Virus record (IMG/VR): IMGVR_UViG_3300042387_000948
Coordinates: 143,030 to 207,029 of that record
Direction: 5' to 3' (one strand)
Length of the DNA stretch: 64,000 nt
Below, piece by piece: positions 26,216 to 63,809 of this stretch (position 1 is its first letter; every line of letters starts with the position of its first letter). Both the position numbers and the translations under genes were made by a program. The notes below the pieces were generated by a model, which saw only the letters and a program-made list of their open reading frames with translations, did not search any database and had not been told where the DNA came from.

Positions 26216-26234
26216 AATATTGTAGTAGATATTA

Positions 26235-26783: not shown

Positions 26784-29102
26784 TTAAGCGTTAAACGATG
26801 CTCCAGTTGGTAAGATGTTGAAATCAATTACGATGAATTCAGCTGTCTTAGCCGGTTGTAAAAATATTTGTCCTGCTAATACATTTCTATCTATTACATC
26901 AGGAGTATTGTTAGTTTCATCCATCACTACTTTGAATGCGTATAAACCTTGTCTTTGTTGAATTGCTTCGAAATAAGGGTTTACAGTGTTTAAGAATCTA
27001 TTTCTAGTCGTTGTAGTGTTTTGTTCAAACAATAGGTAACGAGACGTAGATGCGATGAATTTCTTAACAGTGATTAATAATCTTCTTACGTTGATTCTAT
27101 CCAATGCTGATGCTTTATCTTGCAATGTCTTCTGTCCGAATGCTACAATACCTTGTCCAGGGAATGAAGCGATTGGATTAACTTTGTTTTCGTATAAAGT
27201 ATCTCTTTCAGAATGTGTTAATCTATTCAATACACTAATTGCTCCAGTGATACCACCTCTATTTAAACCAGCAGGTGCGAACCATTCTGCTGCCAATCTA
27301 TCATTAGCTGCAAACACTCCAGGTAATAATACTGAAGGTGGAACACTCATTATTTTATTATTATTATTGTCAATTGTCTTAACCCAAGGGTAGTAAGTTG
27401 CTACATAGTTTGAATCTACTGAATTAGATTGTAAAGTAGTATCTGCTATATCGGAATCAGCTTCACTAAAGTCAGCTATGTAGAATGTATCTTGTCTATC
27501 TTCAACCATATCAATAACCTTAGTAGTTACCGATGGGTGTAGAGAACGAATGATACCAGGAGTTACAACTAAGTTAATATCATACTCATCCGGATTAGAT
27601 ACAGCGTTTATTGCTTTGAAATATGCAGTTGTACCAGATGATGCTCCATTTGAACAATCAAATCCTTGCGTATTTTGTTGAGTGATATCAGTTCCAAGTG
27701 CTTTAGCTACCGTTGGGTTCATACCATCGTATCCACCTTGCAATGCTAATACAAACTGTCTTTTAACCATATCTGCCGAATTTGAGCCCGTCATTTGATA
27801 ATTTAATTGAGAATCAAACGCAAATGTTACGTTAGAACCAGTTTGTGCATTTGCAGGAAGTGGTTTTAAATATTGTTTGTTATCAATTGCCACACCAACA
27901 GTTTCAAAATCAAATCCAGAATAATATAATGGAGATGATGATGTATTTCCAGTTGAGCTTGTTTGTAATGTTATAGCAGGTACTAATAACGATTCTGCAG
28001 CATTTGTTGCTGTAATTGGGTTTGTATATGCCCCATGTCCAAAAGGTGCTGCTGATATAGGGAATGAACCCTGAGCTGCTACTTCAACTCTAATATATTT
28101 TGAACGATTTTGGTAATCACCATTTTCAGTAATTTTACCATCTTGATTTAATGTAATAAATCTATCACCAATTCTTCTTGCAATATAATTTGTAGAAGCA
28201 GGGTCTAAGTTTACATTATTAAATGTTTCAAAAACTACTTTTCTTTTATCAGTATCAGAGTATGAACGAACAGTTACAGTAAATGTTGAATAATCCGTTG
28301 CTCCATCTTCGCCAGCTGCCTTAACATTAGAGATACCAATTTTAAATTTAGTATTATAAACATTACCATGTCCTAATGTGTGGAAACTGAATAGAGGATA
28401 TCTAACACCACTAATATCTTGAGATACTACAAATGGTGTTGATGCTACACTTGCCTCATATGCATAATCTTGAGTTGGTAATACAACTCTAGTTATTACA
28501 ATGTTATTTCCAGCAGAACCTGTGTAGAATGATGCCAAATTCTCAAAATAAGAATGTACATATGCTGCTTTACTTCCAAATGGTGATTCACCAAATACAT
28601 CAGCTAAATCGTTTGTTGCGGTTGGTAATATTGATGCGGATACGTTTGTACCAGCAACCAATGCATTGATTACAAAAGAACCATCTAATGCATCATTACT
28701 AACTATACTTGCTCCAGTAAATCCAACACCCTCATCACCAGCTGCAGTTGAGTGTAATACACCAATTAGTTTAGTTCCTACTGATTGTGCCGATGAACCA
28801 GAAGCAAATATTGCTAAAGGTGCTACTTGAGAATATCCAGCAGTACCAGCTACCCTTACAATAGTTGCTGAACCAGCTTCTCTAAGGTAGTTTTGTACTG
28901 CATATTCAGTATAATATGTCCCATCAGGTGTACCGAAGATATCTTCAAATTCTGATTGAGTTCTTACAATCGTTGGTACGAATGCCGGTCCTTGCTTAAA
29001 AGGTCCTATAAATGCTGCTCCGATTTCACCGATTCCTTGCGCTAAGAAGGATAAATCGTTTTCTCTTGTGAATACACCGGGTGATACAATTCTTTCTGCC
29101 AT
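26784..29102 (-). CDS. Tail sheath protein (gp18-like)
   Basis: SPGVFTRENDLS, WFAPAGLNRG, LYENKVNPI, FGQKTLQ, DRINVRRL, FEQN, AEFIVIDF. Confidence 0.95.
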   Translation of the reverse strand: MAERIVSPGVFTRENDLSFLAQGIGEIGAAFIGPFKQGPAFVPTIVRTQSEFEDIFGTPDGTYYTEYAVQNYLREAGSATIVRVAGTAGYSQVAPLAIFASGSSAQSVGTKLIGVLHSTAAGDEGVGFTGASIVSNDALDGSFVINALVAGTNVSASILPTATNDLADVFGESPFGSKAAYVHSYFENLASFYTGSAGNNIVITRVVLPTQDYAYEASVASTPFVVSQDISGVRYPLFSFHTLGHGNVYNTKFKIGISNVKAAGEDGATDYSTFTVTVRSYSDTDKRKVVFETFNNVNLDPASTNYIARRIGDRFITLNQDGKITENGDYQNRSKYIRVEVAAQGSFPISAAPFGHGAYTNPITATNAAESLLVPAITLQTSSTGNTSSSPLYYSGFDFETVGVAIDNKQYLKPLPANAQTGSNVTFAFDSQLNYQMTGSNSADMVKRQFVLALQGGYDGMNPTVAKALGTDITQQNTQGFDCSNGASSGTTAYFKAINAVSNPDEYDINLVVTPGIIRSLHPSVTTKVIDMVEDRQDTFYIADFSEADSDIADTTLQSNSVDSNYVATYYPWVKTIDNNNNKIMSVPPSVLLPGVFAANDRLAAEWFAPAGLNRGGITGAISVLNRLTHSERDTLYENKVNPIASFPGQGIVAFGQKTLQDKASALDRINVRRLLITVKKFIASTSRYLLFEQNTTTTRNRFLNTVNPYFEAIQQRQGLYAFKVVMDETNNTPDVIDRNVLAGQIFLQPAKTAEFIVIDFNILPTGASFNA

Positions 29103-29255
29103 TTTTTTATCTCTAAAATTCTATGTTTGTTATTTTGTAAAAAGTATTCCAATTTACACATATAAATATAAACAAAATACCCAAAACATAAATTTTATAT
29201 TAAAAATATATTTTGGGATGTTTTACTATTGTTTTATTGTTTTAAATGATACCTA

Positions 29256-29687
29256 TTATGGATTAGATATACTTACAAACTCCCATCTATCACAAAATAT
29301 TTCGGAAGATATACTTGCTCTCCCTGGCCAACCACCATTGCTAGGACTCTGAAACCAAAGGTCGGCTTGTCTAAATGATGTACTCCAACCCCTATCTATA
29401 TTTGCACCACTTGTCCAACTTCCAGCATTGAAACCATAAGTGTTTCCACCAGTATCAACCCATAACGCATTCCATATTGTCAATGCTGAATTAAAATCAG
29501 AAGAACCATTTGTTTGAACAAATGACATATAAGTTTTAACAATAATGTGTAGATGCGGATTTCCTCCAGAAATATTAAATCGAAGGTAAGGACCAACATT
29601 ATTTTTACCGCGTGAATATACTCTCATATAAGAGTTATTATTCGATTGATTCATAATTAATCCCTGATTCCCTGTTATTCTTGCCAT
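29256..29687 (-). CDS. Small beta-rich protein, paralogue 3 of a triplet; candidate fibre-tip component
   Basis: Similar size, composition and terminal patterns to its two neighbours. Confidence 0.5.
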   Translation of the reverse strand: MARITGNQGLIMNQSNNNSYMRVYSRGKNNVGPYLRFNISGGNPHLHIIVKTYMSFVQTNGSSDFNSALTIWNALWVDTGGNTYGFNAGSWTSGANIDRGWSTSFRQADLWFQSPSNGGWPGRASISSEIFCDRWEFVSISNP

Positions 29688-29693
29688 AATTAT

Positions 29694-30155: not shown

Positions 30156-30156
30156 A

Positions 30157-30618: not shown

Positions 30619-30621
30619 AGT

Positions 30622-30978: not shown

Positions 30979-30984
30979 ATTTTA

Positions 30985-31383
30985 TTAATTAGTTGGTGTT
31001 AGTGGTTGTGGTGTTACACTAGAACCGCTTGTTGGTGACCATGGTAAATTAACATCACTAACTTCCGCAATAGACAATTTACTTCTATTGATTTGTTTAT
31101 CCATTTGTCCTTGAATATGGTCCCAATAATTTGTTACAGCCGAACTACTTACCGTATGTTTAATCCACCCTAATACTTGAGTTTCAGTTAAATTAGCATA
31201 TTCAATGAAACTACCCGTATCAATTGTTTTTAAATCAAATGGAGTTGCTCCACTAAATTCACCAGTATTTCCATCCATATCGGTACAAATCACTTTCCAT
31301 CTAGTTCCAATAACAGCATCATTGATACTATCGGAAGTTGCTTTTTTAATACCTGTTACAGACCATTCGTAGGTATATCCCAT
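30985..31383 (-). CDS. Fibre-associated small protein / chaperone
   Basis: YTYEWSV...FSGATPF...FIEYANLTETQVLGWIK...LPW; immediately downstream of the fibre gene. Confidence 0.6.
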   Translation of the reverse strand: MGYTYEWSVTGIKKATSDSINDAVIGTRWKVICTDMDGNTGEFSGATPFDLKTIDTGSFIEYANLTETQVLGWIKHTVSSSAVTNYWDHIQGQMDKQINRSKLSIAEVSDVNLPWSPTSGSSVTPQPLTPTN

Positions 31384-31442
31384 AATTTTATTCGTTTATT
31401 ATATATTATAAATATAGTTATTTTTTATTTTTATTGTAAACA

Positions 31443-34400
31443 TTACTTACCCAATAATGCCTTTAATTCATTTATTTGTTGTTGTTGTTCTTTTATTGCC
31501 TCAATTAGTAATGCCGTTATTCTTCCATAAGATACCGAATCTGCTTCTCCAGATTTTGTAAAGTTAATAATTTCAGGAACAATATCTGCAACTTCTTCCG
31601 CAATTACACCAATTTCAGTATCATCCGAACCTTTTCTATTGTAAGTTACACCTCTTAATAATAATACTTTATCCAATGATTTATTTAAACTAACTACATT
31701 TTCTTTATATCTAATAGATGATGTTTCTGTCAATGATATACAATTCAGTACATTTAAGTTTGTTGTACCATCCGGGTCACAATAATACCCACTATTATTT
31801 GAATCATAAATTATAGTTGACCAGAATACACCTGAACTTTCGTTCAAGCCATACATTGCTATTTTATACCAAGCACGTTTTGTATTCCAATAAGATGTAT
31901 GCCATAAACCTTGAATAGGTCCACCAACTATTTGGATACCATATCCGTTATTATACCCAGCTACATAGTGATGGGCCTGAACACCTACATAGTGAGATGT
32001 ATCACCAGGAGAGTTTGGAATACCACCCCAAGTATCAATAAATCCAGACCCCCAACCAAATGCAGAAATAAAATCGGTTGTACCCCAACCCATTGTACCT
32101 ACCCAATAGTTAGAATCTCCAGTATAATCGTTTCTTCTAAAGTTACCTTTGGCTGTCAAACCAATTCTCATTTTAGAGTAATCATCAGTTCCTTGCCATC
32201 TAGTAGTACCATTTCCATCAAAATAGAATCCGGTATCACTTCTGTCATAAAATATAGCTGAGCGAATATCTCCCGTATTAATGTATGAACCATCGTTTAC
32301 GGTTAATGGTACGTTAAAGTAAAAATTAGGTCTATCAGTGTACATGTGTGCATGTCCACTATTCGCAGGTCCAAACCAAATATATCCATCATTTGTTCTA
32401 AATCTAACTCCCCATGTACTTTCCCCATCAAATCTACCAGTATTAGTTGATGTACCAAATCTTAGTTGATTAAATATAGATGTAGATAACGGGTCTGCGT
32501 AATATCCAGTATTATCTCTATCATAAAATATTGGTGCTCTCATCGAATCTCTAGCAAACATATTACCAGAAGTATCTATACCACCAACCGTTTGACCTGC
32601 AGCTTCCGAATAAAAATGGAAAGATTCAGTTCCCACTAATTGCGATGTTACTCTTTTACCAACATACCAACCACTACCACTACCACCATTATAACGAACC
32701 ATAGCTTCGTATCCATTTCCTGGATTGATATAAAGGTATTTGTTTGATGCACCGGTAATAGTTAAATCCCAAAGAACAGATGTTGAACGAGGGTCTGTAT
32801 AATAACCGGTATCGTTACTATCGTAGAATATTGGTGCTCTTAATGAGTTACCACCCGTTGCGTAATTGTTAAATAATACAGTATTGTTTGGATACAACTC
32901 CATATTAGTAACTCTAGTACCAGATGTGTTAGTATTGTAGAAATATATATCCCCAGATGAAGCGAATCTCATATAACCTTGTCCAAACGAAGTATTTAGT
33001 CTACCAAATCCAGAAGGAGAACCACCATCGTTTGTTACGTTATATCCAAATCCAGCTCCTTCCCAACTTACATTAGGTTCAGAACACCACATTTGCAGTT
33101 GTACAATACCAGTACCATTTCCATTATTTGCAGCAGGTAATCTATTAATTATTTGAGAAGTAGCATGTGCTCCACTATTTCTTATACCACCAAATAATTC
33201 GGTAAATGTTGCAGGGTCTACATAATAAGCAGTATTTGCCGAATCATAAAACGCAGTTGCATATAATCCAGTAGCGTTCCAATATCCTAATTCAGCTCTA
33301 TTATAACGATAGAAATGTAATGCTCCTCCAGCTGCACCAGCTTCAGTTTTTCTGCCACCAATACCAGCATATTCTCTAATTGTTCCACCACTATCTTTTA
33401 GTTGGAAATGTAAATTAGAACCTACTGATGTTGCTGAGTTATTGTGATTTGTTCTTGTTAAATGTAATGTACCATATGTACCATCATCACTAAATGAAGT
33501 TCCACCTTTTCTCATATCAAACGCAACAGGTGTCGAATTTGATGTGTGCTCTAATATTACTTCATTTGCATTACTAAAGTTTATTGCATTACCAGCGTTT
33601 GTTAAATTTAATGTAGCAAATGTTGGAGAATCGGTTGTTTGAATATTTTGATTCATTAAATGAACTTCAGTTGCACCAGGACCTGTGTTAATATTACCAG
33701 CTATTGTTAGTGTAGTACCATCAAATGTAAGATTACTTTCAACTGTTGCGTTTGGTGCAGTTCCGTTTAATGTAATTACACCATTATCGGTTGTACCGGT
33801 TAAAGCAAGTACTCCAGACGTACCAGATGTACCAGCGCCAGATGTTCCAGACGTACCAGATGTACCAGCACCAGATGTACCACTACTTCCAGATGAACCA
33901 GATGCGCCGGATGAACCAGATGCGCCGGATGCACCAGAAGTACCACTACTTCCACTACTTCCAGAAGAACCAGATGCGCCGGATGCACCACTACTACCAC
34001 TTGTACCACGTGTACCAGACGTACCTGATGTGCCTGAAGTACCACTTGTACCAGAAGTTCCGGATGAACCAGAAGTTCCGGATGAACCAGAAGTACCACC
34101 AGAACCAGAAGTACCAGCTGCGGCTAACCAAGCTGAACCATTATATCGATATATGTTTGTATCTGAAGTATTGTAATATATTTGTCCAGCTTTTGTACCA
34201 ACAGGATTTGTTGCGAATGCTGGAATTCTCAATGAACCACTTATATCCACCGAACCAGTAAATTCTTGTGTATCATTTGTTGCATCACCAAATTTATTTG
34301 AACCAGATGAGTAAATTAAAGATGATGAAATAAATTGTACTAATATTTGTTGTGCTCGGATTGTACCACCAACAGTTAAGTTACCACTAAGGGTTTCGTT

Positions 34401-37400: not shown

Positions 37401-38171
37401 TGTACCACCAACACTTAAATTTCCAGTTATTGTTTCATTACCAGTGATGGTTTGATTTCCAATCACACTTGAATTACCCACTAAAGTTTGAGAACCAGTT
37501 ATTCTTAGTGCACCAGATATAAAAGTTGAACCACTTATATCAAATTGAGTTGTTGGTGTTTTTCTTATACCAACATTTCCACCACCATTTGCTAAAATTA
37601 CATTAGATGTTGATGCCCTATTAAGATATAAATCTACATTTGTTGAATCTATTCTACCATTAGATGGTGTAATTGCAATTGTTCTACCATTAGTAGTTGC
37701 GGTTATTGAAATTGAAGTATCGGGTGCGTTTACATTAATACCACCACTAACTATGTTTAAATTTCCACCATTTATGTTTTCACTACCACTAATATTTAAT
37801 GAACCACTTATCGTTGTATTTGTATTTACAACTAATCCTAAATTTGGTGAAATTACTGCTTGTGCTGAACCTGATTTAATTCTATCCAAATCACCAATTG
37901 AAGATGCATTGATATTCGTTAAACCACTACCATTTCCTGTAAATAATGATGCCGATACTGAACCACTAAATTGTGAATTTGCATTTATTTGTAATGTTGC
38001 TCCGTTTGGAGTCCCAATTTGATAAGTTTGTACGGCCGAACCACTTAGTTTACCAACAACACTTACCGATTCTGAAGTAGCAGTTAAAATAGATGAACCA
38101 CTTACAAAAAGTGATACACTATTTACACTATTTTGATTTAACCCATTGGGACTTTTACCGTTGAACTCCAT
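31443..38171 (-). CDS. Long tail fibre (2242 aa) with Gly-X-Y tracts and a C-terminal peptidase S74 intramolecular chaperone
   Basis: C-terminal TSSIRYKEN...LRGVTY...IGVIAEEV...[16 protein letters not shown]; three (GTS/GSS)n tracts; FYD..TGYY.DP repeats. Confidence 0.85.
33810..37150 (-). repeat. Three proline-free (Gly-Thr/Ser-Ser)n tracts (about 33810-34120, 35255-35700, 36100-37150)
   Basis: 9-bp degenerate periodicity; Gly at every third residue. Confidence 0.95.
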
Positions 38172-38190
38172 TCAATTATGTTTTTTTATT

Positions 38191-38523
38191 TTATGTCAAT
38201 TCTAATATTGAAACAATCACATCTGCTGAATTAGCTAATGAGGATGTTACCGAAAGTAAATCATTTGCTTCCATTACCACTTTTTGTTCTCCACCAACTA
38301 ATACCGTTGAACCACCCTGTACAATTAAAGCATCTTTTACTAAAAATACTGCTTTATTTGCCGAAGTATCTCTCAACATTACACTAACCGATATGTTTTG
38401 TGAAGCTACATTAGCCACATTTACACCAATTACCGTTGTTGTAGTTGCAGATGGTACAGTGTACACCCCAACTCCCGTTGAACCAATTGAACCAGTTATA
38501 CTATTTTTAAATATATTTGCCAT
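38191..38523 (-). CDS. Small beta-sandwich virion connector protein
   Basis: VYTVPS...VIGVNVAN...KVVMEANDLLSV...VSILE; homologous to the ends of 50292..51164. Confidence 0.65.
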   Translation of the reverse strand: MANIFKNSITGSIGSTGVGVYTVPSATTTTVIGVNVANVASQNISVSVMLRDTSANKAVFLVKDALIVQGGSTVLVGGEQKVVMEANDLLSVTSSLANSADVIVSILELT

Positions 38524-38529
38524 CTTTTT

Positions 38530-38859: not shown

Positions 38860-38905
38860 TTAATAGTTTGTAATGTTATAGATATAAATATAAGTTATCT
38901 ATCTT

Positions 38906-39349: not shown

Positions 39350-39350
39350 A

Positions 39351-40253: not shown

Positions 40254-40258
40254 AACTT

Positions 40259-51164: not shown

Positions 51165-51189
51165 TTCTTTTTATTTTTATTTCTTTTTT

Positions 51190-54100: not shown

Positions 54101-57100
54101 CTCATATAAGCAATAGTTTCATCAACTATGAATTTAGAGTTACTTACTAATAGATTATATGCCGAATTTATTTTTGTATTTGTATTTGCTATTGGGAATG
54201 TTGATGGTCTAAATCCAATTGAGCTTGTACCATTGTTCAATAACACATCAATTACTAAAGATAAGGATGCTGATATTAATTTACCTTGCAATCTTGCTCC
54301 ACCACTTCCACTTATAATTTGTGGTGTGTTGGTTATCTTAATACTTGCCGATGTATTTGATACAATTGTTGGAAGTAACGATGTTCCATTTTCTACAATA
54401 TCCAAAACAATTCCAAAACCAGATGATACTTTATTTATTTCAAATTGCCCAGCAGTTTGTGTATTTGCAGTTGGTAGTAATCCCGTCTTTGTAATTGAAC
54501 CACTGGCATTTGTTACCAATGTAGGAATTGAACCAGTACCATTTGCAATTATATTAACTACAGTTCCAAATGAAGAACTTACAACATTTGTTTCGGTTGG
54601 ATATGTTCCAATTCCAATTATTTGAGAATCTGAACTAATATTCCATAAGTTTGGATTATTTAGATTAAATCCATATAACGATGGAAAATTAGAAACTAAT
54701 GAATCAGGTAAAGATGATGAACCATTCTCAATAATATCAGTAATCAAATTAAATGAAGCAGTAATTAAACCAATTTCACTACCACTAGCTGAATTAGATG
54801 CTGTGATTGGAAAAATGTTATTTACTTTTATTCTACTTTCAACATTTGATACAATTGATGGTTTTACTTCAACACCACCCTCAATAATTTTAGTTACAAT
54901 ACTAAATGATGAAGAAACATTTGTTACTTCAGTAGAACTTCCACTATTGGCAGATGTTAATTGAATTACATCAGATACTTTTATGTTACCATCCGTATTT
55001 TTACCAAAATTAATTGTATCTAATGTAATATTTGATACTAATTTGTTCACTAAACTATTTGCATAATCTATTGAATCTATTGTTTGTCCTTTTTGCTCTA
55101 CCGAAGTTGCTTTTGATGGGAATTTGTAATAATATACACCAGATTCCACACTACGTTCGTTTCCACCATAAACAATATCAGTTGCTACACTATCTACAAT
55201 AAATCCAACATCTCTACTACAAGAAGCTTGGTTATATACCAAATTAGGATAAAATGCGTTAGTGTATTGAATAGTTTCTGTTTGGATAAACTCTCTATTT
55301 GCTTGTACTAAATTTCTTACATTTAATTTTTCGTTTGAAGCAGTTACAAATGTATTACCTAATACAATTTTTTGAGCCAAACCACTACCATACTTAATAC
55401 CAGTAATTGTTGGGTCTAATTGATTTGTTACAGAAGGAACACCACCAACAGTTGCTGCCGATGGATATAAGTAATAGAATCTACCGGCAGTTATTGTTCT
55501 TTCGTTACCACCATATACCAAATCGGTTCTTACTGCATCAATAATATATTTTACATCTCTCTTACATTTAATCTCATCATATTGAACACCTCTCCAAGAA
55601 GAACTTACATAAGCAACCACTTCTTCAGAAATTAAATTTTTATTTAACGATAATAAATTACTAGCATTTGTTTTGTTTTGTGAAGCAGTTACAAAAGTAG
55701 TACCAACAACAACTTTTTGTGTTATTCTACTTGCGTAATCGATACCATCAATTGTTTGTATTAATTGAGAACCAGTTGCTTGGGATGGGTATAAATAATA
55801 AAATGCACCAGCCGTTACACTTCTCTCATTTCCACCATATACTAAATCCGTTCTTACTGCATCAATTACGTGTCCAATATCTCTCTTACACTTAACATCA
55901 TTATAATCAAAATTACCCCACGAAGATGATAAGTAAGCAATAGTTTCACTTTGAATAAATTCTCTATTGTTTTTTAATTGTAATGATGCATTTTGTACTT
56001 CGGTATTTGCAAAAGAATAAACTATATTTTGTAAAGTTTTTTGTGCTAATTTACTAGCATACTTTATACCATCTACAGTTTGATTTAATTGAGAACCAGT
56101 TGCTGCTGATGGATATTCTAAATAGTATTTTCCATTTACTAATGATGCTGAATATGAATTATATAATAAATCTTCCGCTGCTCCATTTACAATTAAACCA
56201 ATATCTCTACTACAACTTACATCATTAAATACAAACCCATTCCAAGAAGAAGATAGATAAGCAATAGTTTCTGCCTGAATAAATGGAATGTTTTGTTTTA
56301 ATAAATTATATGCATAATATACAACTATATTATTAGATGCGGATACATATGATGATGTTGGTAATAATAATGATGATGTTACTCCACTATTTCCACTTAA
56401 AATATCAACTACCAATGATATTGATGCTGATATTAAAGTTGCTTCAGCAGATGTACCACTAAATGATGATGAAATGTATTGTGGTGTATTCGTTACTTTA
56501 ATACTTTGTGATGTATTTAGGGTAATTGTAGGAACTACACCTAACCCATTTTTAATAATATTTTTAATTGTTTCAACCGATGAACTAATTGCAGTTGCTT
56601 GTGTTTGAGTTGCATTACTACCAGTCCATTGAGTTACATTTGTAACTTTAATACTTTGTGATGTATTTGATTGAAATGTAGGTATTGAACCTGTTCCATT
56701 TTGTACAATGTTTATAATTGTACCAATAGAAGAACTAATTAAATTAGCTTCTGCTTGAGTTGCGGATGAGGCGGTTGTTAAAGTTAAACCACTTACAATA
56801 ATCAAATCAGATTGAGATGAAGTTATAGCAGGTGATGTTGAACTTCCACTTTGAATAATTGAAGTAATTATATCAAATTTAGTATTAATTGAAGATGTTA
56901 AATTAGCAGAAGATGTTGTTGATGTTATTTGAACACCATTTGTAATATTTAATGGATTTGTATTACTCCAATTTTGTCCATTATTTTGTGCTAAAATTGA
57001 AGGTATTACCGAAATACCTCTTTTTACAATTGATTCTATTATAGTAAACGAACTACTAACATAATTTTGTTGAGTCACACTTCCACTAAAAGATGATGTT

Positions 57101-60100
57101 TGATTTGTTAAAGATGATAATCTAAAATTCTTCTCATCATTAAAAACAATACGTGGGGTATCTAATATTTGATTTTGAACAATAGTATCTCCAATAATTT
57201 TTGCATATCTAATACCAGCAATAGTTGATGTTCTTTGAGTTGTAGTTGCTAAAGATGGATAATCGTAATAATATCTACCAGCAGTTACACCTCTTTCAAT
57301 TCCACCATATAATAAATCGGTTGCTATATTATCAACAATATACCCAACATCTCTTTTACAAGTTGCTTGATTATATTTTAAGTTTGGAAATGAAACATTA
57401 ATAAATTGAATTGTTTCGTTTTGAATTAATTCTTTATTGTTTATTAAATTGTTGTATGCAGATAATGTTGTTGCATCGGGAGCTGTAAATGGTTTTTGTT
57501 TTAATAAATTATTAATCAATCCACCAGCATATCTAATACCATCCGCAGTTTGTCCTAATTGTCCAACACCATCACCATCACCTCGTACGATTGCCAATGA
57601 TGGAAATTGATAATAGTACTCACCAGCAATTATACTTCTTTCATTTCCACCATATTTTGCATCAGTTGCTACTGCATCTAAAATGTACCCAACATCACGT
57701 CTACATTTTTCCTCATTATAATAAAAATTAGACCAAGATGATGATAAATAAGTTATTACTTCATTTTGTACAAATGTTTTGTTATCTCTAATAGTATCCC
57801 AAACATCATCTGCTTCCGTTGATGGTTCTGTATAAACTTTACCTCTAATTAAATTTAGTGACACTCCGGCTGCATGTTTCATAGCAGTTAATGTTGGTCC
57901 TAATTGTGTAGTTATTGCTTCGGATGGAAATTGATAATAAAATAAACCATTTCTAATACTTTCTTCGTTACCTCCAAAAAGTAGGTCTTTTGCTACACCA
58001 TCTACAATATATCCAACATCTCTTTTACAGGTTTCTTCCAAATATGAAAACCCACTCCAAGACGATGATACGAATTGTATTACCTCATCTTTGATAAATT
58101 CTTTGTTATTTACTAATATTTCATATGCTGTTACAACATCAATGTTTGTTTTAGCTATTGAACTACTTTGTATTGTAGCTGGATATGTTAATGTATTCTT
58201 AATTAAGTCAAATGGTGTTGTGGATGAATTTATTATATCAATCGTACCCCCCATTGAACTTCTATTCTGCGATACATAATATAATCTATTTGGTGCGTTA
58301 TAAGGTACTGTAAATGTTATTGTACCTCTACTATCACCATTATTTACCATACCAATATTATAATCATATTTTTCAGTAATACCTTCTAATTGTTCTGTTC
58401 TAATCCAAAAAGGATATTCAATTCCACCAAAATCTTCTATCGCATCTACGTTAAATTTGTAGGTTTCTCCTCTAAATAAAGTTAATGTAGGATTATTGCC
58501 AATTCCTTCAAAATTAAATGAAGAACTATTATTATTTGTTATTACAAAAGATTTTTGGTGATTAGCCGGTATTGGTAAAATATTACTACCAGTACCATTT
58601 GCTAAAATATTATAAACAATGCTAAAACTTGCACTTACGGAATTTATTGTTGCTAAAGATGATGTTACACCAAGCATGGTTTGGTCGGTAGTTCCCCCCT
58701 TTATACTACCACTTGCATTTGCTACATAAGTTGGTTTAACAGAAACACCCTTTGTAATAATATTAAGTACTGTACCAAATGATGAACTTACACTTGACGT
58801 AAGTGGAGATTCATTTGCTATTGGTTGAATCGTATCGTTACCAATTTTTCTACTAGCACTAGTGTTAGATTTAAAGTTAAATGAACCAGTACCATTTGCT
58901 AATATACTTAACAAAGCTGCATATGATGCACTTGTAGTATTTAAATCATGTTGAGTAGCTGATATTGATGATGTTATTTGTTGTGCTCCTAAAATATTAT
59001 ATGGAGAATCAAATCCATATCCTTTTATAGAACTTTTTGCTAATAAAGTTGGGAAATTAGATACACCTTTATCAACAATTTCACTTATTAATTTATAATC
59101 CGAAGATATTTCATCTGCGGCAGCAGTTGATAATGTTGTTGTTGCCGGTACTCTACTTTGTGTGTATAATACAGGTGAAGTTAAACGAATACCCTCATCA
59201 GTATTTAATTTTGTTATGGTTGGTAATCCGTTTTCCAATCCTTTGTTAAGAACATCAACAACACAACTCCAAGTTCCTCTTACACTATCTCTAGCTGCAA
59301 TGTTACCACCACTGCCAGAAATAAAACGAGAACCAGATGCATACATACCATACAAACCAAATGAAATATTTGAGTTGTTTAGTGTAGCATGTCCACCATT
59401 GTTTACTCTAATAGAATAGTATGAAAAGTTATTAAAGAAAGATACCAACTGAATAAAACCTCTACCATTAACCAAACACCCAACTCCGTTTGGAGAAATT
59501 TGAGTGTAGGCATCTAATACCATTGAAGCCAATGGTGAATCTGGGTCTACCACATCACCATTAACATAAAGACCACCACCACCCGGTGGAATATCCTCAT
59601 AGAGTTCCGTAAATGAGTTCTCCTGATTCGAAATCTGCGAGCAGTTCTGAATGTATGGGGAAGTTGTTATGAACGCTCCTGGTTGAAATGCCACAGCAAA
59701 TCCTCTTTCAGGATTTATTTGGTCTGGGAATAATCTCAAACCACCCATAGTTACCTCTGCAATATAACATCCAGAGTTTACATGAAATAGGTCTTCTGTT
59801 GGACTTTTAGCGTTAATTTTAGTAATACGCAAACCAGCACCCCAAATACTTGTGTTTTTTGGAAGTATTACAGGATTATCTTCCAAATATGTTCCTGCTT
59901 GTACTTTAATTACATATCCATTAAATACAGAACCAGTATCAAAACCATATCTACCATCATAACCAGGTGTTGCTAATGATGCTGCTTTTTTAATTGTACG
60001 AAGTGGGTATTGAATACTTCTACCATCATTTGAATCATCTCCATCGGTTGAAGATACATAAAGTGTAGGTAAATTTGCACCAAAATCTCTAGAACGAATC

Positions 60101-60393
60101 CCATCGTACAATATAGTATCTTCTGCTAATAATGCGTTAGATGCAGTTGCAGATAATAACGTTAAGTTAGCAAGATTTAATTCACCATCAATAATTAAAG
60201 AACCTGTAAGAAAAACCGAACCAGTAATTTCACCCCTATCAGTTAATTCATTTCCTAAAAAGAAATCATTATCAACCTGTAAAGAACTACTAAATAGGGC
60301 ACTTCCAGTAACAATTAAATCTCCACCAATTCGTAATGAACCGGATAGGTCTTGTTGTTCTTCAATTTGTTTACGAGGTATTAATCTTGCCAT
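51190..60393 (-). CDS. Giant virion protein (3067 aa): beta-helix region plus 15 phycobiliprotein-like helical repeats
   Basis: [14 protein letters not shown]...[16 protein letters not shown] and SPYIQNCS (pectate-lyase-like beta-helix start); 15 CxRD...DL.YGGN repeats; C-terminal [13 protein letters not shown]...TPFSLAL. Confidence 0.8.
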   Translation of the reverse strand: [3067 protein letters not shown]

Positions 60394-60776
60394 TATACTA
60401 TTTCTGCTATTTTTCCTTTAACTTCAAAATCTATTGCTCTAACATCAGCTGGTACTCTTGTTATATCAGCTATAAATGTTATTATTATATCATTATTATT
60501 TGCAATTATATTATATCTATCTTGTGGTTGTTTTACTCCATATAAATACACATCAACATAATCTTTTACATTATCAACTTCCAAAATATCAAAAATAAAT
60601 CTTTTACTTCTCAAACTTAGTGTAAAATAAATGCCATCCGTTAATACTATATCGGTTGGAAAATAACTATATGTAAATGTGTCTGTATTAACTTTTAATA
60701 CAAAATCTTTAAATCCTAACCTATCTCTCCTTTTAAGAGTTGTTCCTAAATCAATATTTGGTACTTTTCTGCTCAT
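60393..60776 (-). CDS. Hypothetical virion protein
   Basis: DVYLYGV...I.F...VKGKI C-terminal pattern shared with both upstream neighbours. Confidence 0.55.
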   Translation of the reverse strand: MSRKVPNIDLGTTLKRRDRLGFKDFVLKVNTDTFTYSYFPTDIVLTDGIYFTLSLRSKRFIFDILEVDNVKDYVDVYLYGVKQPQDRYNIIANNNDIIITFIADITRVPADVRAIDFEVKGKIAEIV

Positions 60777-61129
60777 TTGAATTTTTCTACGTCTCCGTTT
60801 ATTTTAACTTCATCAGTTTCATCGATAGTATATGGGTCACCAAACCTATCTAATTCTGGAAATTGAGTTCTTATAAATTTTATATAAAAATCGTTTCCAA
60901 TCATTCCAAAAATATAATCAGTATCTCTTATAAATAATCCATTTATAAAAACATCAAATCTTGCGGATGGCTTTCTTAAATTTTCTAATTTTGAAAATAA
61001 AGTTTTTACTCTAACGCCATCTACTTTAAAAATCCAATAAAAGGGATGTTCTAAATCATAAGCAAATAATTCAAACTCATTTGGAGCATTGACTTCTTTC
61101 ATTATGTTTTTTAATTGTGTTATGTTCAT
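60773..61129 (-). CDS. Hypothetical virion protein
   Basis: FDVFINGLFI...DETDEVKING, similar to the C-terminal domain of 61126..62190. Confidence 0.55.
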   Translation of the reverse strand: MNITQLKNIMKEVNAPNEFELFAYDLEHPFYWIFKVDGVRVKTLFSKLENLRKPSARFDVFINGLFIRDTDYIFGMIGNDFYIKFIRTQFPELDRFGDPYTIDETDEVKINGDVEKFK

Positions 61130-62190
61130 AGTTCTTGGAATTTACCAGTTATAGCAACTTCGTCTTGAGAATCTAATGTAAATGATAATGCAGTAAACGT
61201 AAATATTATTTCTTTAGTTGCCCCATTATATGAATATGTATAAGCAGATGGGGAAATAAAATCACCATTTATATAAATTCTAAACCAATTTACAATATCA
61301 AACACACCAATTAATTCGGATGGAAGTATTGGTTTTCTAACATTAGTCAATTTAACGGTAGTACCATTTACAAATTCTGCCATTTGTGAACCTCTAACTG
61401 CTACAAAATCAATTACCTGTGCATATTCATTATAAAGAGATGGTTGACTTCCTAATATACCACCGGTTAAATCTGTCTCAATCCCAAATACCACTTTTTT
61501 AGCAGTAAATGATTTTTTAACAGTTGGTTTATTGGAATGTTCGGCAGGTAATAGATATGCATTTACTACCATAGTAAATACAGTACGAATTATTCTTTCA
61601 GTACCATCCCCAACTTCTTGTTGATTATCAAATGAATCTATTCGGGTTCTAAATTTATATCCATCTTTACTTCCCCAATATCTATCAGTTGCATATTGAA
61701 ATTGTTCTACTATTTGATTCATATGTTCCGTAAATGATGTCCAAATCATTACTTCATATGTCACAGTAACATAAGATGGCATTGCAACATCATATTGTTC
61801 ATACGATGGATTTGCATTATTTTGTAAACTAAATCTTTCGTATCTATTTCTTTTTGAATATTTTTGTATAGATGGCATCGATACACCATCTTTAAAATTA
61901 GTAATAGATGAATCTCTTTCAATTGAGTTTCTTTTAAACATTACTAATGGTATTTGTATTCTACCTCTAACATCTCTTAAATACCCGTCCTTTCTAGCAT
62001 TATTCCATCTTTCCGAATTACCATATATTAATGGAACTTTTATAGGAGAACCATTTTCTTCCAATTCAGGTATAATTGTATTAACCATATAATCGGCAAT
62101 AGTAGTATCAATATCAATTAAGTTTACACTTCTTTGAACTTCTTTTTCTATTGGAATTTGATTTGCTCTATTTGTTTCTCGTATGTCCAT
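61126..62190 (-). CDS. Tail completion / sheath stabiliser (gp15-like) with a C-terminal extra domain
   Basis: KVPLIYGNSERW, PSYVTVTYEVMIWT...MNQIVEQ; follows the neck genes. Confidence 0.7.
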   Translation of the reverse strand: MDIRETNRANQIPIEKEVQRSVNLIDIDTTIADYMVNTIIPELEENGSPIKVPLIYGNSERWNNARKDGYLRDVRGRIQIPLVMFKRNSIERDSSITNFKDGVSMPSIQKYSKRNRYERFSLQNNANPSYEQYDVAMPSYVTVTYEVMIWTSFTEHMNQIVEQFQYATDRYWGSKDGYKFRTRIDSFDNQQEVGDGTERIIRTVFTMVVNAYLLPAEHSNKPTVKKSFTAKKVVFGIETDLTGGILGSQPSLYNEYAQVIDFVAVRGSQMAEFVNGTTVKLTNVRKPILPSELIGVFDIVNWFRIYINGDFISPSAYTYSYNGATKEIIFTFTALSFTLDSQDEVAITGKFQEL

Positions 62191-62651
62191 TATACTACCC
62201 TCATTTCGGTTTGAATTGAACTTTTTCTACTCATAAATGTTGAACAAATAATTGAGAAATGTTCCTGGTCACCAGTTCTACCACCTATCAATTGGTCTTC
62301 TCTCACATTATCAATTTCAAAGTAAGCATCATTATGAAAAATAATATCTCCAATTTCAGGATAAAATCCAGTATCTTTCAATGTAAATCTATTAAAACGA
62401 AAATCTACAGTTTGCCCCTGGTCAGAACCAAATCCTTCATAAGTTGCAGTTGTATCCTGTCTTTCAATCATAGCGTTACATTCAACACCCGAATAATAGG
62501 TTTTGGAAAGTGATTCTCCATAAAGATTTGTTTTTGAATTTTCTATGACAAGTTTATATAGTACAACAGCCGTAGTTACAACTGCATCTACTAATTCTCT
62601 TGATATTCCCTCGAAAAAATTTATATCACGTTGAAGTGTAAAGCGAGCCAT
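62190..62651 (-). CDS. Head closure / neck protein (gp14-like)
   Basis: NLYGES, YPEIGDII...YFEI. Confidence 0.7.
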   Translation of the reverse strand: MARFTLQRDINFFEGISRELVDAVVTTAVVLYKLVIENSKTNLYGESLSKTYYSGVECNAMIERQDTTATYEGFGSDQGQTVDFRFNRFTLKDTGFYPEIGDIIFHNDAYFEIDNVREDQLIGGRTGDQEHFSIICSTFMSRKSSIQTEMRVV

Positions 62652-62654
62652 ATT

Positions 62655-63809
62655 TTATCCGATATAAATTGCTAATGGTACTTTTCTCAACATTTCTTGA
62701 TGTTGATTTGCCTCATTATTTCTATTTTCAAATTGAACTTTTCTGCTCAACTCTTCTAAATTTTCTCTTAATTGAGTCATTAGAGCTTCTTTCTCCGTTT
62801 GGGCTTCTGCTCTCAATGCCGCACCATCCAATGATACTTCGGAACCGGGTATGGGTATAGTAGAATACTTTTCTCTAACTGCTCCCAACAATTCTTTAAC
62901 TAATGAAAGAGTATATTTTCTAATCCATTGTTTACCTACATCATTGATATCAGAATATTGAATAAAATCATATCCTACATTTGAATAATCTGCAACTACA
63001 TCCGATTGTACACCAACTGAATTTTCTATAAAATCTTTTCTCACATAATAGTCTATCCAAAGTTCTTTTATAGTTGATGCTGCTGGTCTTGGGAATATTG
63101 TCAATTTATTATCCACAATATTGAATGTATGTGCGGATTTTCTTATCAGGTCATTGAATTCTATTTGTTGAATACGAAGTAAATCCTCAAATATTGGCAT
63201 TAACACAAATTGTGCAGCCGGAGAGAATGAACCAAAACCAAATTCATCAATTAAGTTCAATGTACCTTGTCCACTTACTGAATAAGGGTCAAAGAAACGA
63301 GAGATTGCTGGTGTTACTTCAAAATATACTTTTGCTATATCAATTGGTTCTCCATTTTCATCAGGAACTGCAATCAATTGATGTAAATCGTAGACTTGCT
63401 GTGAACCAGTCAACATTATTTTTACCTTTTTGTATTCTGTCTTACCACCTGCCCCAACTAATGTACCATAGGCATCAGAAATAGTTACTAATTGTCCTAA
63501 ATTACTACCATTTACTAATTTTTGAGAATAGTTTGTTCCAGCCGCCTTACCTTTTAAGGTCTCCAGATTATTTCGTATATTAAATTGATTAACTTGTGCT
63601 CCATATTCAGATGTTGCCTCTTCAAAACATGCGTAGAAGTTTTCATCTACCAATTCCACATTTTGGATTGGATAACCTAATCTTCTAGCACACCATAAAG
63701 CAACCTTTGGAGCATCCGATTGAAATGTATAATCATTATCATATATTTCAAAAGGTGTTTGACCGGGAAAGAATGATGATGAACCGGGATATATTAATTC
63801 TTGTGCCAT
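62655..63809 (-). CDS. Neck / head-tail adaptor (gp13-like)
   Basis: RRLGYPIQNVEL, WIRKYTLSLVKELLG.VR.KY, V.LDG..L..EA..EK..L, final IYIG. Confidence 0.85.
   Translation of the reverse strand: MAQELIYPGSSSFFPGQTPFEIYDNDYTFQSDAPKVALWCARRLGYPIQNVELVDENFYACFEEATSEYGAQVNQFNIRNNLETLKGKAAGTNYSQKLVNGSNLGQLVTISDAYGTLVGAGGKTEYKKVKIMLTGSQQVYDLHQLIAVPDENGEPIDIAKVYFEVTPAISRFFDPYSVSGQGTLNLIDEFGFGSFSPAAQFVLMPIFEDLLRIQQIEFNDLIRKSAHTFNIVDNKLTIFPRPAASTIKELWIDYYVRKDFIENSVGVQSDVVADYSNVGYDFIQYSDINDVGKQWIRKYTLSLVKELLGAVREKYSTIPIPGSEVSLDGAALRAEAQTEKEALMTQLRENLEELSRKVQFENRNNEANQHQEMLRKVPLAIYIG

What the first reader, a model, noticed from the sequence alone, without database searches (positions are those of the whole stretch)
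26784..63809. Virion-wide [S/T]-[G/A/S]-S motif: a candidate modification sequon written into unrelated structural proteins
Seen: SGS, TGS, SAS, TAS and SSS recur heavily in proteins of unrelated folds. Examples are the fibres ([20 protein letters not shown]), the helical repeats (YLSSSW, ATGSQ, FVTAS), the 109-aa adaptor (6 copies), the 290-aa connector (about 6), the sheath (FASGS, VSASI, YTGSA, QTGSN, MTGSN), a fibre chaperone and the neck protein. They are rare in the cytoplasmic enzymes, tube and tape measure. Inference: enrichment independent of fold and limited to external proteins is what a recognition sequon for a phage-encoded modifier (such as an O-glycosyltransferase) would produce. 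It differs from the Bacteroidota D-(S/T)-(A/L/V/I/M/T) O-glycosylation sequon. No modifier gene is visible in this window.
Basis: partly seen in the sequence, partly recalled or inferred. Interest (0 to 1): 0.75.

Follow-up and report, generated by a model that had tools for sequence, protein, structure and literature searches.

The report
Serine-rich fibre motif near glycosyltransferases
A short Ser/Thr-Gly-Ser pattern really is over-used in this phage's tail fibres and tail sheath, and the phage does carry a large sugar-building gene cluster, but the pattern looks mainly like a signature of the fibre building blocks, and its role as a sugar-attachment signal is unproven.

Summary
The excess is real. 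With collagen tracts masked and composition shuffled locally, [ST]GS occurs 185 times against 37 expected, [ST]AS 90 against 25 and [ST]SS 77 against 44. This is in 12 fibre-type proteins plus the sheath. It is directional (TGS far above SGT), acts at protein level, survives weighting for repeats, and is absent from T4 and from cyanophage homologues of the helical giant.

It is not virion-wide: 16 other tail, neck and baseplate-region proteins have 4 against 13.7 expected. The fibre proteins are not unrelated either, because they share shuffled modules. Two collagen-like proteins (the 2242-aa fibre and a 341-aa protein outside the window) owe their counts to local composition.

The predicted modifier exists outside the window. 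A glycan cluster of about 21 kb with no membrane-spanning proteins holds at least 8 glycosyltransferases. Its core cassette (nuclease, GT461, GT-B p430, small ORF, collagen-like protein, GT2) was conserved in all 13 inspected long related contigs that reach past the small ORF.

Sheaths of three lineages that share this GT core are enriched at partly different positions. A related sheath whose searched genome region lacks p430 and GT2 orthologues is not.

In fibres the motif sits between hydrophobic residues or at helix ends, and is tied to particular shaft modules.

Verdict: mostly a structural module signature. Fibre glycosylation is plausible. The sequon is unproven (about 0.2).

The parts
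26784..29102 (-). Tail sheath, 772 aa. It has 8 motif sites, all between residues 101 and 440, which is the variable insertion region.
   Evidence: phrog_23 E 5e-73. Foldseek top hits are T4 gp18 and other sheaths. 8 vs 3.3 by local shuffle; [ST]GS 4 vs 0.76, p 0.0065. 73 orthologues average 9.0 vs 3.1. In the AF2 model the sites lie in loops or at strand ends.
30985..31383 (-). 132-aa protein of unknown function (phrog_7802), 3 motifs.
   Evidence: 3 vs 0.6-0.8, p about 0.02.
31443..38171 (-). 2242-aa collagen-like tail fibre with a C-terminal Peptidase_S74 chaperone domain. It holds three copies of the module '[16 protein letters not shown]-x-FTGS..ISGS'.
   Evidence: Pfam Collagen 4e-54, Peptidase_S74 5e-10. 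91 motifs, below local-shuffle expectation for the whole protein. Non-collagen part: [ST]GS 28 vs 8.6. Modules listed.
38191..38523 (-). 110-aa fibre-associated protein (phrog_1276 N-terminal type), 2 motifs.
   Evidence: not significant (p 0.2-0.3).
38530..38859 (-). 109-aa protein. It is a stand-alone copy of the fibre N-terminal 'LSGSFTGSF' module, with 6 motifs.
   Evidence: 6 vs 0.9. BLAST links it to the 3067-aa and 2242-aa proteins. Residue -1 is hydrophobic at 100% of sites and residue +3 at 83%.
38906..39379 (-). 157-aa tail-fibre assembly protein (chaperone), 0 motifs.
   Evidence: phrog_4912 4e-17; count.
39351..40253 (-). 300-aa protein (phrog_9915), 4 motifs, not enriched.
   Evidence: 4 vs 2.5, p 0.22.
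40259..50227 (-). 3322-aa fibre. The N-terminal ~1700 aa are tandem '[10 protein letters not shown]...SGSTFSGSL' repeats with two inserted globular domains. A (GTS)n collagen region of about 1100 aa follows.
   Evidence: Pfam Collagen 4e-110. Sequence. Non-collagen part: [ST]GS 85 vs 15, [ST]AS 42 vs 8.7. Spacing peaks at 4-6 residues.
50292..51164 (-). 290-aa fibre-associated protein, 6 motifs.
   Evidence: 6 vs 1.5, p<=0.008. BLAST link to the 3067-aa giant.
51190..60393 (-). 3067-aa giant structural protein. It has 15 helical repeats of about 110 aa (C-x-RD...YGGNERS) that carry 'Y-x-SSSW', 'ATGSQ' and 'FVTAS'. It also has shorter 'SSSF..NGTGSIPT..SGSIK' repeats.
   Evidence: phrog_4527 5e-134, phrog_5342. 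82 vs 21-26. Repeat alignment A3. In the AF2 repeat model the motifs fall at helix termini. Cyanophage homologues are not enriched.
60393..63809 (-). Neck and tail-completion genes (127, 118, 354, 153 and 384 aa). They are essentially motif-free: 2 motifs in 1136 aa.
   Evidence: phrog_211 and phrog_227. Counts.

Best explanation
The tripeptide excess is a genuine, lineage-specific, protein-level feature, but it is not one uniform signal. Most of it is the sequence signature of a few serine-rich fibre building blocks. These were multiplied by tandem duplication and shuffled among at least ten fibre-type genes:
(i) a beta-strand unit, hydrophobic-[S/T]-G-S-hydrophobic. In a regular strand, Gly and the flanking hydrophobic residues would face the fibre core and the two hydroxyl residues would face solvent (inferred from the alternation pattern);
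(ii) Ser/Thr-x-Ser at helix ends in the helical giant, and at conserved repeat positions in the 764-aa fibre (no structure was predicted for that protein);
(iii) G-S-S variants of collagen triplets.
A second, independent component is about eight semi-conserved x-G-S loops in the outer insertion region of the sheath.

Separately, the phage encodes a glycan-assembly cluster of about 21 kb with no predicted membrane-spanning proteins. Its conserved core is physically coupled to a collagen-like fibre gene. I therefore think fibre glycosylation in the cytoplasm is plausible (inferred, about 0.4). The more likely acceptors are the Thr/Ser of the (G-T-S)n collagen tracts or Ser/Thr-rich fibre surfaces in general, not a strict [S/T]-[G/A/S]-S sequon.

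Shown here: the enrichment, its context, the module sharing, the gene cluster and its synteny. Inferred: any modification.
For: - Hydrophobic residues at -1 and +3 in 50-100% of sites, against a background of about 33%.
- Motifs fall at fixed positions in repeated modules.
- In the repeat model, SSS is the C-terminal end of helix 2, TGS sits just before helix 5, and TAS lies in the linker before the next repeat.
- The fibre-type proteins share BLAST-detectable segments.
- Giant fibres in 18 close relatives have [ST]GS O/E of 0-2.0 (14 of them 0.6 or below). The eight compared by BLAST share with ours essentially only the motif-poor C-terminal ~600 aa, plus short segments in four of them. Their sheaths keep about the same number of sites.
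- In several variable sheath columns (query residues 140, 421, 489) x-G-S, or G-[S/A] at 421, is better conserved than the first S/T.
- Other structural proteins are depleted.
- Cluster: Pfam hits for 4 GT2, GT11, 3 GT1-type, 3 epimerase/dehydratases, 2 FkbM methyltransferases, DegT, an acetyltransferase and a 2-epimerase. p430 resembles viral GT-B proteins. No TM-like segments.
- The cassette nuclease-GT461-p430-small ORF-collagen-like protein is present in all 13 inspected long loci that reach that far.
- GT461 is 82-100% identical in the 80 loci kept, out of 277 related IMG/VR stretches. That is more conserved than the sheath.
Against: - The enrichment is not imposed by fold. Cyanophage homologues of the helical giant lack it (17 vs 10, 9 vs 10; no SSSW). 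T4 fibres and sheath lack it (27 vs 30.6; [ST]GS 7 vs 11).
- Sheath sites turn over in position while their number is kept across three lineages that share the GT core (own 8, Mel-JY01 11, immuto 10; 8 of 10 immuto sites fall at columns the family does not use). The related LR756508 sheath has none, and no p430 or GT2 orthologue was found in the 30-kb region searched around its GT461 orthologue. That pattern is what selection for motif density, as for a sequon, would give.
- The motif residues are predicted to be solvent-facing, so they are compatible with modification.
- No coordinates were available, so burial was not measured.
Confidence: 0.5

Rival explanations
1. [S/T]-G-S (with weaker A/S variants) is a true O-glycosylation sequon. 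The conserved soluble GT-B pair (GT461 and p430) would attach the first sugar to exposed motif serines on sheath and fibres in the cytoplasm. The variable downstream transferases would then extend the glycan.
For: - A 5-fold, directional excess over locally shuffled composition.
- SGS and TGS are the top two of the 64 tripeptides over S/T/G/A both in the small fibre-associated proteins and in the unrelated sheath family.
- Sheath enrichment in three lineages sharing GT461-p430-GT2_210 (p 0.0065, 0.0085, 0.0005), with positional turnover. None in LR756508 or T4.
- Sites are confined to the variable insertion region of the sheath, in loops.
- Depletion in other tail proteins: 4 vs 13.7 here, 144 vs 287 in relatives.
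- No membrane-spanning proteins in the cluster.
- Precedent for phage-encoded virion glycosylation (PMC11256854, citing Freeman 2023).
Against: - Close relatives carry giant fibres with almost no motif.
- Context is hydrophobic flanks or helix caps at fixed repeat positions.
- The first position is poorly conserved in several variable sheath columns.
- The S- and G-rich 143-, 153- and 153-aa proteins next to the sheath have 0.
- The co-occurrence with transferases rests on four lineages with a single negative.
- No modified residue has been observed.
Confidence: 0.2
2. There is no virion modification at all. The glycan cluster remodels host surface polysaccharide (superinfection exclusion, or preventing re-adsorption), as is usually proposed for such clusters in cyanophages and jumbo phages. 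The motif is purely structural.
For: - This is the published interpretation of similar clusters (P-SSM2, PMC1079782; jumbo phages, PMC7824862).
- The distal part of the cluster is polymorphic among relatives, as those papers describe.
- The enzyme set (GT11, FkbM, DegT, epimerases) is typical of O-antigen or capsule loci.
Against: - No flippase, polymerase, lipid-carrier initiating transferase or any TM-like segment in the cluster (a crude hydropathy scan).
- The core GT461-p430-GT2 is conserved in phages of a cyanobacterium and a Flavobacterium, whose surface glycans are expected to differ.
- A collagen-like structural gene sits inside the conserved cassette.
- p430-like proteins fall in clusters that are 96-100% viral.
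Confidence: 0.25
3. The excess is a statistical artefact of Ser/Gly-rich composition, repeat copy number and post-hoc choice of motif.
For: It is true for the whole 2242-aa fibre and the 341-aa collagen protein, which fall at or below local-shuffle expectation. Repeats do inflate raw counts: effective length is 20-65% of the real length in the giants.
Against: - Local shuffles, collagen masking and redundancy weighting all leave a 3.5-5-fold excess.
- The reversed tripeptides are not equally enriched.
- A motif defined on the fibres alone is enriched in sheaths of three lineages and not in controls.
- Many different codons are used.
Confidence: 0.05

Closest known systems
Virion O-glycosylation of mycobacteriophages (Che8, Rita; Freeman et al. 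2023, as summarised in PMC11256854)
   Same: Phage-encoded glycosyltransferases in a tailed phage. The proposed targets are virion structural proteins, modified before lysis.
   Different: There, two to a few transferases act on the major capsid protein (tail-tube targeting is from my own recollection of Freeman 2023). Here there are at least 8 transferases plus sugar-tailoring enzymes. The tube has no motif, and no capsid gene was found on the contig. Nothing is shown biochemically here.
Chlorovirus (PBCV-1, NY-2A) virus-encoded capsid glycosylation with atypical sequons (PMC9614988)
   Same: Soluble virus-encoded transferases build complex, methylated glycans. The best solved relative of GT461 is chlorovirus NY-2A B736L (3OY2, E 5.6e-10). 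The idea of a virus-specific sequon (NTXT there) is a precedent.
   Different: That system is N-linked, on the capsid of a eukaryotic virus. The similarity to B736L covers only about 130 residues of the GT-B C-terminal domain. B736L's own acceptor is unknown.
BclA-type collagen-like glycoproteins of the Bacillus exosporium (own knowledge; BclA and anthrose mentioned in PMC9614988, PMC6222408)
   Same: Trimeric collagen-like filaments with Thr-rich G-X-Y triplets. The genetic neighbourhood has deoxy-, amino- and methyl-sugar enzymes and transferases. Here the (G-T-S)n protein lies inside the transferase cassette.
   Different: BclA is a bacterial spore surface protein, not a phage fibre. No glycan has been shown here.
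Serine-rich-repeat adhesins glycosylated by GtfA/GtfB (own knowledge)
   Same: Cytoplasmic O-glycosylation of S-x-S-type repeats by a pair of GT-B proteins, followed by soluble extending transferases.
   Different: GT461 finds no GtfA or GtfB among solved structures at E<=1, and p430 finds none at all. No accessory Sec system was looked for. The repeats here are embedded in hydrophobic beta or helical modules, not disordered tracts.
'LPS/capsule' gene clusters of cyanophages and jumbo phages (PMC1079782, PMC7824862)
   Same: Large, polymorphic clusters of epimerases, kinases and several transferase families in big myoviruses.
   Different: Those are proposed to act on host surface polysaccharide. 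Here a highly conserved GT-B pair is coupled to a collagen-like structural gene, and no membrane components are present.
Bacteroidota general O-glycosylation, D-(S/T)-(A/I/L/V/M/T)
   Same: A three-residue O-glycosylation sequon.
   Different: That sequon is not enriched here (29 vs 44.7 in fibre-type proteins plus sheath). From own knowledge, that system acts in the periplasm, whereas phage particles assemble in the cytoplasm.

Membership tests
Protein glycosylation sequon (generic) | Over-representation beyond composition and repeats | tested here: met
   [ST]GS 185 vs 36.9. Redundancy-weighted O/E about 3.5.
Protein glycosylation sequon (generic) | Recurrence in proteins of unrelated fold | tested here: inconclusive
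   Fibre-type proteins share modules. The sheath is one independent case. Other structural proteins are depleted.
Protein glycosylation sequon (generic) | Surface exposure of acceptor residues | tested here: inconclusive
   Only secondary structure was available. Sheath sites are mostly in loops of the insertion region. Helical-repeat sites are at helix termini. Model coordinates could not be read, so no solvent accessibility was computed.
Protein glycosylation sequon (generic) | Co-occurrence of motif and modifier across genomes | tested here: inconclusive
   Three lineages have GT461-p430-GT2 and enriched sheaths. One (LR756508) has no p430 or GT2 orthologue in the 30-kb region searched and no enrichment. 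Too few independent cases.
Protein glycosylation sequon (generic) | Site occupancy by glycan | not testable with these tools
   Needs mass spectrometry of virions.
Phage-encoded virion glycosylation (mycobacteriophage type) | Glycosyltransferase genes in the phage genome | tested here: met
Phage-encoded virion glycosylation (mycobacteriophage type) | Capsid or tail-tube protein as acceptor (tail tube from own recollection of Freeman 2023) | tested here: not met
   The tube (163 aa) has 2.5% Ser and no motif. No capsid gene is recognisable on the contig.
Collagen-like glycoprotein (BclA type) | G-X-Y triplet region rich in Thr/Ser | tested here: met
   Pfam Collagen E 4e-54 and 4e-110. (GTS)n seen.
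Collagen-like glycoprotein (BclA type) | Genetic linkage to sugar-synthesis and transferase genes | tested here: met
   The collagen-like gene follows GT461, p430 and a small ORF in all 13 inspected long related loci that reach that far. In this genome it lies at 125141-126166, inside the cluster.
Collagen-like glycoprotein (BclA type) | O-glycan on triplet Thr | not testable with these tools
   Needs biochemistry.
SRR adhesin / GtfA-GtfB system | GtfA/GtfB-type transferase pair | tested here: not met
   No GtfA/GtfB chain among the PDB sequence hits of GT461 (E<=1). p430 has no hit.
Bacteroidota general O-glycosylation | D-(S/T)-(A/I/L/V/M/T) sequon enriched in targets | tested here: not met
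   29 vs 44.7 (O/E 0.65) in fibre-type proteins plus sheath.
Host-surface polysaccharide (O-antigen/capsule) locus | Membrane components: flippase, polymerase or initiating lipid-carrier transferase | tested here: not met
   No TM-like segment in any ORF between genome 104 and 128 kb (crude hydropathy scan). No such Pfam family.

The most novel reading that the evidence does not exclude
A widespread lineage of large uncultured myoviruses (more than 600 related sheath stretches in IMG/VR) decorates its tail sheath and fibres with phage-made glycans. A conserved, virus-specific pair of GT-B transferases would read a minimal directional sequon, [S/T]-G-S. Selection would keep the number of sequons on exposed domains while their positions drift, and would purge them from other tail proteins.
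Probability: 0.17. Interest if true: 0.8.

Novelty: new variant of a known kind. Interest (0 to 1): 0.5.

Why it matters
Covalent glycosylation of tailed-phage particles has so far been demonstrated essentially only in some mycobacteriophages. If this abundant environmental lineage glycosylates its sheath and its giant collagen-like fibres, virion glycosylation would be a much broader phage strategy, for example for shielding, stability or adhesion. The conserved GT461-p430-collagen cassette would be a compact system for testing it in a heterologous host. Even on the conservative reading the result is useful. The tripeptide marks a family of serine-rich fibre shaft modules with no solved structure. 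It also shows that large 'LPS-like' clusters in big phages can be physically coupled to a structural gene.

Tried and rejected
- DNA-level explanation (a repeated oligonucleotide or recombination signal). Rejected: motif instances use many different 9-mers and both Ser codon families.
- Pure composition or repeat artefact. Rejected for most proteins, accepted for the collagen tracts.
- A generic property of myovirus fibres and sheaths. Rejected: T4 has 27 vs 30.6, the cyanophage giants are about 1x, and LR756508 has 18 vs 15.6.
- DNA glycosylation as the cluster's role. Made unlikely by analogy: the Flavobacterium phage immuto, which has the syntenic cluster, has fdPreQ1 replacing dG and no sugar-modified nucleoside was reported (PMC10516641). 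Not tested for this phage.
- Bacteroidota D-(S/T)-x sequon. Not enriched.
- GtfA/GtfB kinship. No hit.
- Solved homologues of the SGS fibre modules. Only non-significant similarity to a left-handed beta-helix (LpxD, E 0.04-0.5).
- Isolate-phage relatives of the SGS repeat region. tblastn matched only the two inserted globular domains.
- Search for head genes, to test 'virion-wide'. None found on this contig or a 188-kb relative with Pfam Gp23. The control genomes did not ring either, so that search is uninformative. PHROGs on 20 large ORFs and tblastn with Mel-JY01 head proteins also found none.
It was rerun with window and IMG/VR sequences only.
- Correlation of fibre and sheath motif load among relatives. 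Weak (rho 0.33, p 0.06) and confounded by relatedness.
- Testing whether transferase content and motif swap together. Not feasible: contigs holding both the cluster and the sheath are near-identical to this genome.

Full report
CONTEXT. The window is the last 64 kb of a single 207,029-bp viral contig. All genes in it lie on the minus strand. It is a myovirus. The sheath is at 26784-29102, the tube at 26235-26726 and a baseplate hub at 25332-26123. Neck genes lie at 60393-63809 and replication enzymes at 865-15974. A fibre block of about 31 kb sits between the neck and sheath genes. It holds:
- a 2242-aa collagen-like fibre with a Peptidase_S74 chaperone domain;
- a 3322-aa fibre, with about 1700 aa of tandem Ser-rich repeats followed by about 1100 aa of (GTS)n collagen;
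- a 3067-aa giant made of helical repeats;
- several small proteins.
The nearest isolates by sheath are Microcystis phage Mel-JY01 (48%), an uncultured 484-kb phage LR756508 (44%) and Flavobacterium phage immuto (35%). IMG/VR holds more than 600 related sheath stretches, and the 80 best loci have 63-100% identical sheaths.

(1) Shuffling within each protein, globally and in 30- or 12-residue blocks. The excess persists for the sheath (8 vs about 3.3), the 109-aa protein (6 vs 0.9), the 290-aa protein (6 vs 1.5), the 3067-aa giant (82 vs 21-26) and the 3322-aa fibre (172 vs 141). It also persists for three fibre proteins outside the window (764 aa, 46 vs 8; 422 aa; 228 aa). It vanishes for the 2242-aa fibre as a whole and for a 341-aa collagen protein.

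(2) Masking the collagen tracts. The remaining sequence has [ST]GS 185 vs 36.9, [ST]AS 90 vs 24.9 and [ST]SS 77 vs 43.7.

(3) Down-weighting positions whose flanks recur elsewhere. O/E stays near 3.5.

(4) Same-composition controls. The signal is directional: TGS 59 vs 15.6 against SGT 29 vs 15.1. SGS and TGS are the top-ranked small-residue tripeptides.

(5) Codon usage. Many different 9-mers and both Ser codon families are used, so the constraint acts on protein.

The other 239 minus-strand genes of the genome have 64 vs 74.

It is not virion-wide. Sixteen other tail, neck and baseplate-region proteins of the window total 4 vs 13.7. The tail-fibre assembly protein has none. Three Ser- and Gly-rich small proteins next to the sheath have none. 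In relatives, genes downstream of the sheath total 144 vs 287. Head proteins could not be judged. No terminase, portal or capsid gene is recognisable on this contig, which ends 190 bp after the neck gene.

The proteins are also not of unrelated fold. BLAST links the 109-, 228-, 290-, 422- and 764-aa proteins with the giants. One module (YISSS..SSGSNxFGD..H/Q-x-FTGS..SGS) occurs three times in the 2242-aa fibre and twice in the 764-aa fibre, and a similar stretch appears near the N-terminus of the 3322-aa fibre.

WHAT THE MOTIF LOOKS LIKE IN FIBRES. The residues at -1 and +3 are hydrophobic in 50-100% of sites, against about 33% background. In a regular strand this pattern puts Gly and the flanks inside and the two hydroxyls outside (inference).

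In the helical giant, 11 of 15 repeats carry Y-x-S-S/A-S-W. The other four have x-x-[FY]-P there, as the cyanophage homologues do. A model of one repeat (pLDDT 79) places SSS at the C-terminal end of helix 2 and TGS directly before helix 5. TAS falls in the linker before the next repeat. These are classical capping positions (own knowledge).

The motif is tied to particular shaft modules. In 18 close relatives the giant fibre upstream of the sheath has [ST]GS O/E of 0-2.0, and 14 of them are at 0.6 or below. The eight of these that I compared by BLAST share essentially only the motif-poor C-terminal ~600 aa with ours, plus short segments in four of them. No solved structure resembles the modules.

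WHY FOLD ALONE DOES NOT EXPLAIN IT. Cyanophage homologues of the helical giant (S-RSM4 gp214 and S-CAM1 gp73) share the repeat but not the motif (17 vs 10, 9 vs 10). All 21 T4 structural proteins tested, fibres and sheath included, give 27 vs 30.6, and [ST]GS 7 vs 11.

The sheath is the most telling case because it is unrelated to fibres.
- 73 IMG/VR orthologues average 9.0 motifs vs 3.1 expected. TGS (2.57 vs 0.49) and SGS (2.70 vs 0.53) rank first of 64 tripeptides, and SGT is depleted (0.12 vs 0.49).
- Nearly all sites lie between residues about 100-210 and 380-490, the variable insertion region, and mostly in predicted loops.
- By local shuffles, [ST]GS gives p = 0.0065 (own), 0.0085 (Mel-JY01) and 0.0005 (immuto). 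The counts are 0 vs 0.5, 0 vs 0.3 and 0 vs 0.7 in the two LR756508 sheath paralogues and T4 gp18.
- Positions turn over. Eight of ten immuto sites and about half of the Mel-JY01 sites fall at columns the family does not use (alignment uncertainty applies at 43-52% identity).
- In several variable columns, x-G-S (G-[S/A] at one of them) is more conserved than the first S/T.

THE MODIFIER. Outside it, at genome 108.4-129.4 kb, lies a cluster with:
- three GT2, one GT11 and three GT1/GT4-type transferases, one of which (p430) is recognised only by language-model and structure similarity to 96-100% viral GT-B clusters;
- three NAD-dependent epimerase/dehydratases, two FkbM methyltransferases and a hexapeptide acetyltransferase;
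- a DegT aminotransferase, a UDP-GlcNAc 2-epimerase and a PfkB kinase.
A further GT2 lies at about 81 kb. No ORF in the cluster has a TM-like segment (a crude scan).

Three motif-rich fibre genes (228, 422 and 764 aa) lie about 4 kb beyond the cluster's far end, with seven other ORFs in between. A (GTS)n collagen-like gene lies inside the cluster.

GT461 is 82-100% identical in the 80 loci kept, out of 277 related IMG/VR stretches, so it is more conserved than the sheath. I inspected 14 of the 16 loci of 15 kb or more. All 14 show the order nuclease, GT461, p430, small ORF. In the 13 that extend further, a collagen-like protein (332-786 aa) comes next. A GT2-sized ORF of about 210 aa follows it in seven of them, and other ORFs follow in the rest.

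Mel-JY01 and immuto have the syntenic nuclease-GT461-p430-GT2 core without the collagen gene. LR756508 has a GT461 orthologue. No p430 or GT2 orthologue was found in the 30-kb region searched around it, and no GT2 family hit was found anywhere in that genome.

GT461's best solved relative is the chlorovirus transferase B736L. In immuto, DNA analysis found fdPreQ1 and reported no sugar-modified nucleoside (PMC10516641). This argues, by analogy only, against DNA as the cluster's target.

WEIGHING. For a sequon:
- the excess is directional and lineage-specific;
- the same top tripeptides appear in sheath and fibres;
- positions turn over while numbers are kept in sheaths of lineages that share the GT core, and the one lineage without detected p430/GT2 lacks the motif;
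- other tail proteins are depleted;
- the enzymes are soluble;
- mycobacteriophages (PMC11256854) and chloroviruses (PMC9614988) are precedents.

Against a sequon:
- the motif is embedded in hydrophobic or helix-cap contexts at fixed positions of shuffled modules;
- close relatives carry fibres without it;
- the first position is weakly conserved in several sheath columns;
- the co-occurrence rests on four lineages;
- the usual reading of such clusters is remodelling of host surface glycans (PMC1079782, PMC7824862);
- no residue has been seen modified.

The (GTS)n collagen tracts are the substrate best supported by gene linkage, yet they do not match the motif.

VERDICT. The best-supported account (0.5) has three parts. 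The motif is mainly the signature of serine-rich fibre modules plus a set of x-G-S loops in the sheath's outer region. The phage probably can glycosylate something, and the most economical candidates are its collagen-like fibres. The [S/T]-[G/A/S]-S sequon is unproven. The sequon proper gets about 0.2. A purely host-directed cluster with no virion modification gets about 0.25. A statistical artefact gets about 0.05.

I could not compute solvent accessibility because model coordinates are not exposed. I also could not test enough independent genomes for motif-modifier co-variation.

Noticed in passing
Outside the window: genome 125141-131077 (L008:1141-7077; L007). Relatives L098-L177.: The gene order PD-(D/E)XK nuclease, GT461, GT-B-like p430, small ORF (139-185 aa) is conserved in all 14 inspected long IMG/VR loci. 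In the 13 that reach further, a collagen-like (GTS)n protein of very variable length (332-786 aa) comes next. A GT2-sized ORF of about 210 aa follows it in seven of them. GT461 is more conserved (82-100%) than the sheath (63-79%).
   Followed up: yes
window 16797-26726 and 60393-63809; relatives L012-L091 downstream of the sheath: Other tail, baseplate-region and neck proteins are depleted in the motif relative to composition (4 vs 13.7 here; 144 vs 287 in relatives). This goes beyond the mild depletion in T4 (27 vs 30.6) or in the rest of this genome (64 vs 74).
   Followed up: partly
window 63810-64000 (contig end) and genome 1-100000 (L001-L006): No terminase, portal, protease or major capsid gene is recognisable anywhere on the 207-kb contig. 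The contig ends 190 bp after the neck gene although it is rated 100% complete. The head module is probably missing or very divergent.
   Followed up: partly
window 29256-60393: A block of about 31 kb with three giant fibre genes and their accessories sits between the neck and sheath genes. In Mel-JY01 the neck-associated genes run directly into the sheath gene (L009:16950-22430). Relatives swap the giant fibre upstream of the sheath for versions with different shafts.
   Followed up: partly
window 46260-47530 (about residues 900-1000 and 1220-1320 of the 3322-aa fibre): Two copies of a globular domain inserted in the repeat shaft match tail-fibre or baseplate proteins of many marine cyanophages (P-SSM2, Bellamy, P-TIM68; 32-45% identity). 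The surrounding SGS repeats match no isolate phage.
   Followed up: no
window 40806-44021 (+), 35839-37374 (+) and other long plus-strand ORFs; GC 0.41-0.48 at 40-44 kb: Long antisense ORFs (up to 1071 aa) and a local GC rise coincide with the (GTS)n collagen-coding repeats. They are most likely by-products of the repetitive codons, not genes.
   Followed up: no
Outside the window: genome 141473-142273, 133804-135018, 129385-129936, 67814-69340, 36247-37413: Family hits: a Mom-like DNA modification protein, a DruA-like (Druantia) protein, a weak sub-threshold Acb1-like anti-CBASS hit, a tryptophan-halogenase-like protein and a T4 RNA-ligase/tail-fibre-attachment-catalyst homologue.
   Followed up: no
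L092:16512-18986 and 20001-22475 (LR756508): The 484-kb uncultured phage has two adjacent 824-aa ORFs. The second matches the sheath; the first has the same length but was not compared. Neither carries the motif in its insertion region.
   Followed up: no
window 29256-30618: Three adjacent small proteins (143, 153 and 153 aa) are rich in Ser (8.5-13%) and Gly (10-12%), have no family match and no motif. Function unknown.
   Followed up: no
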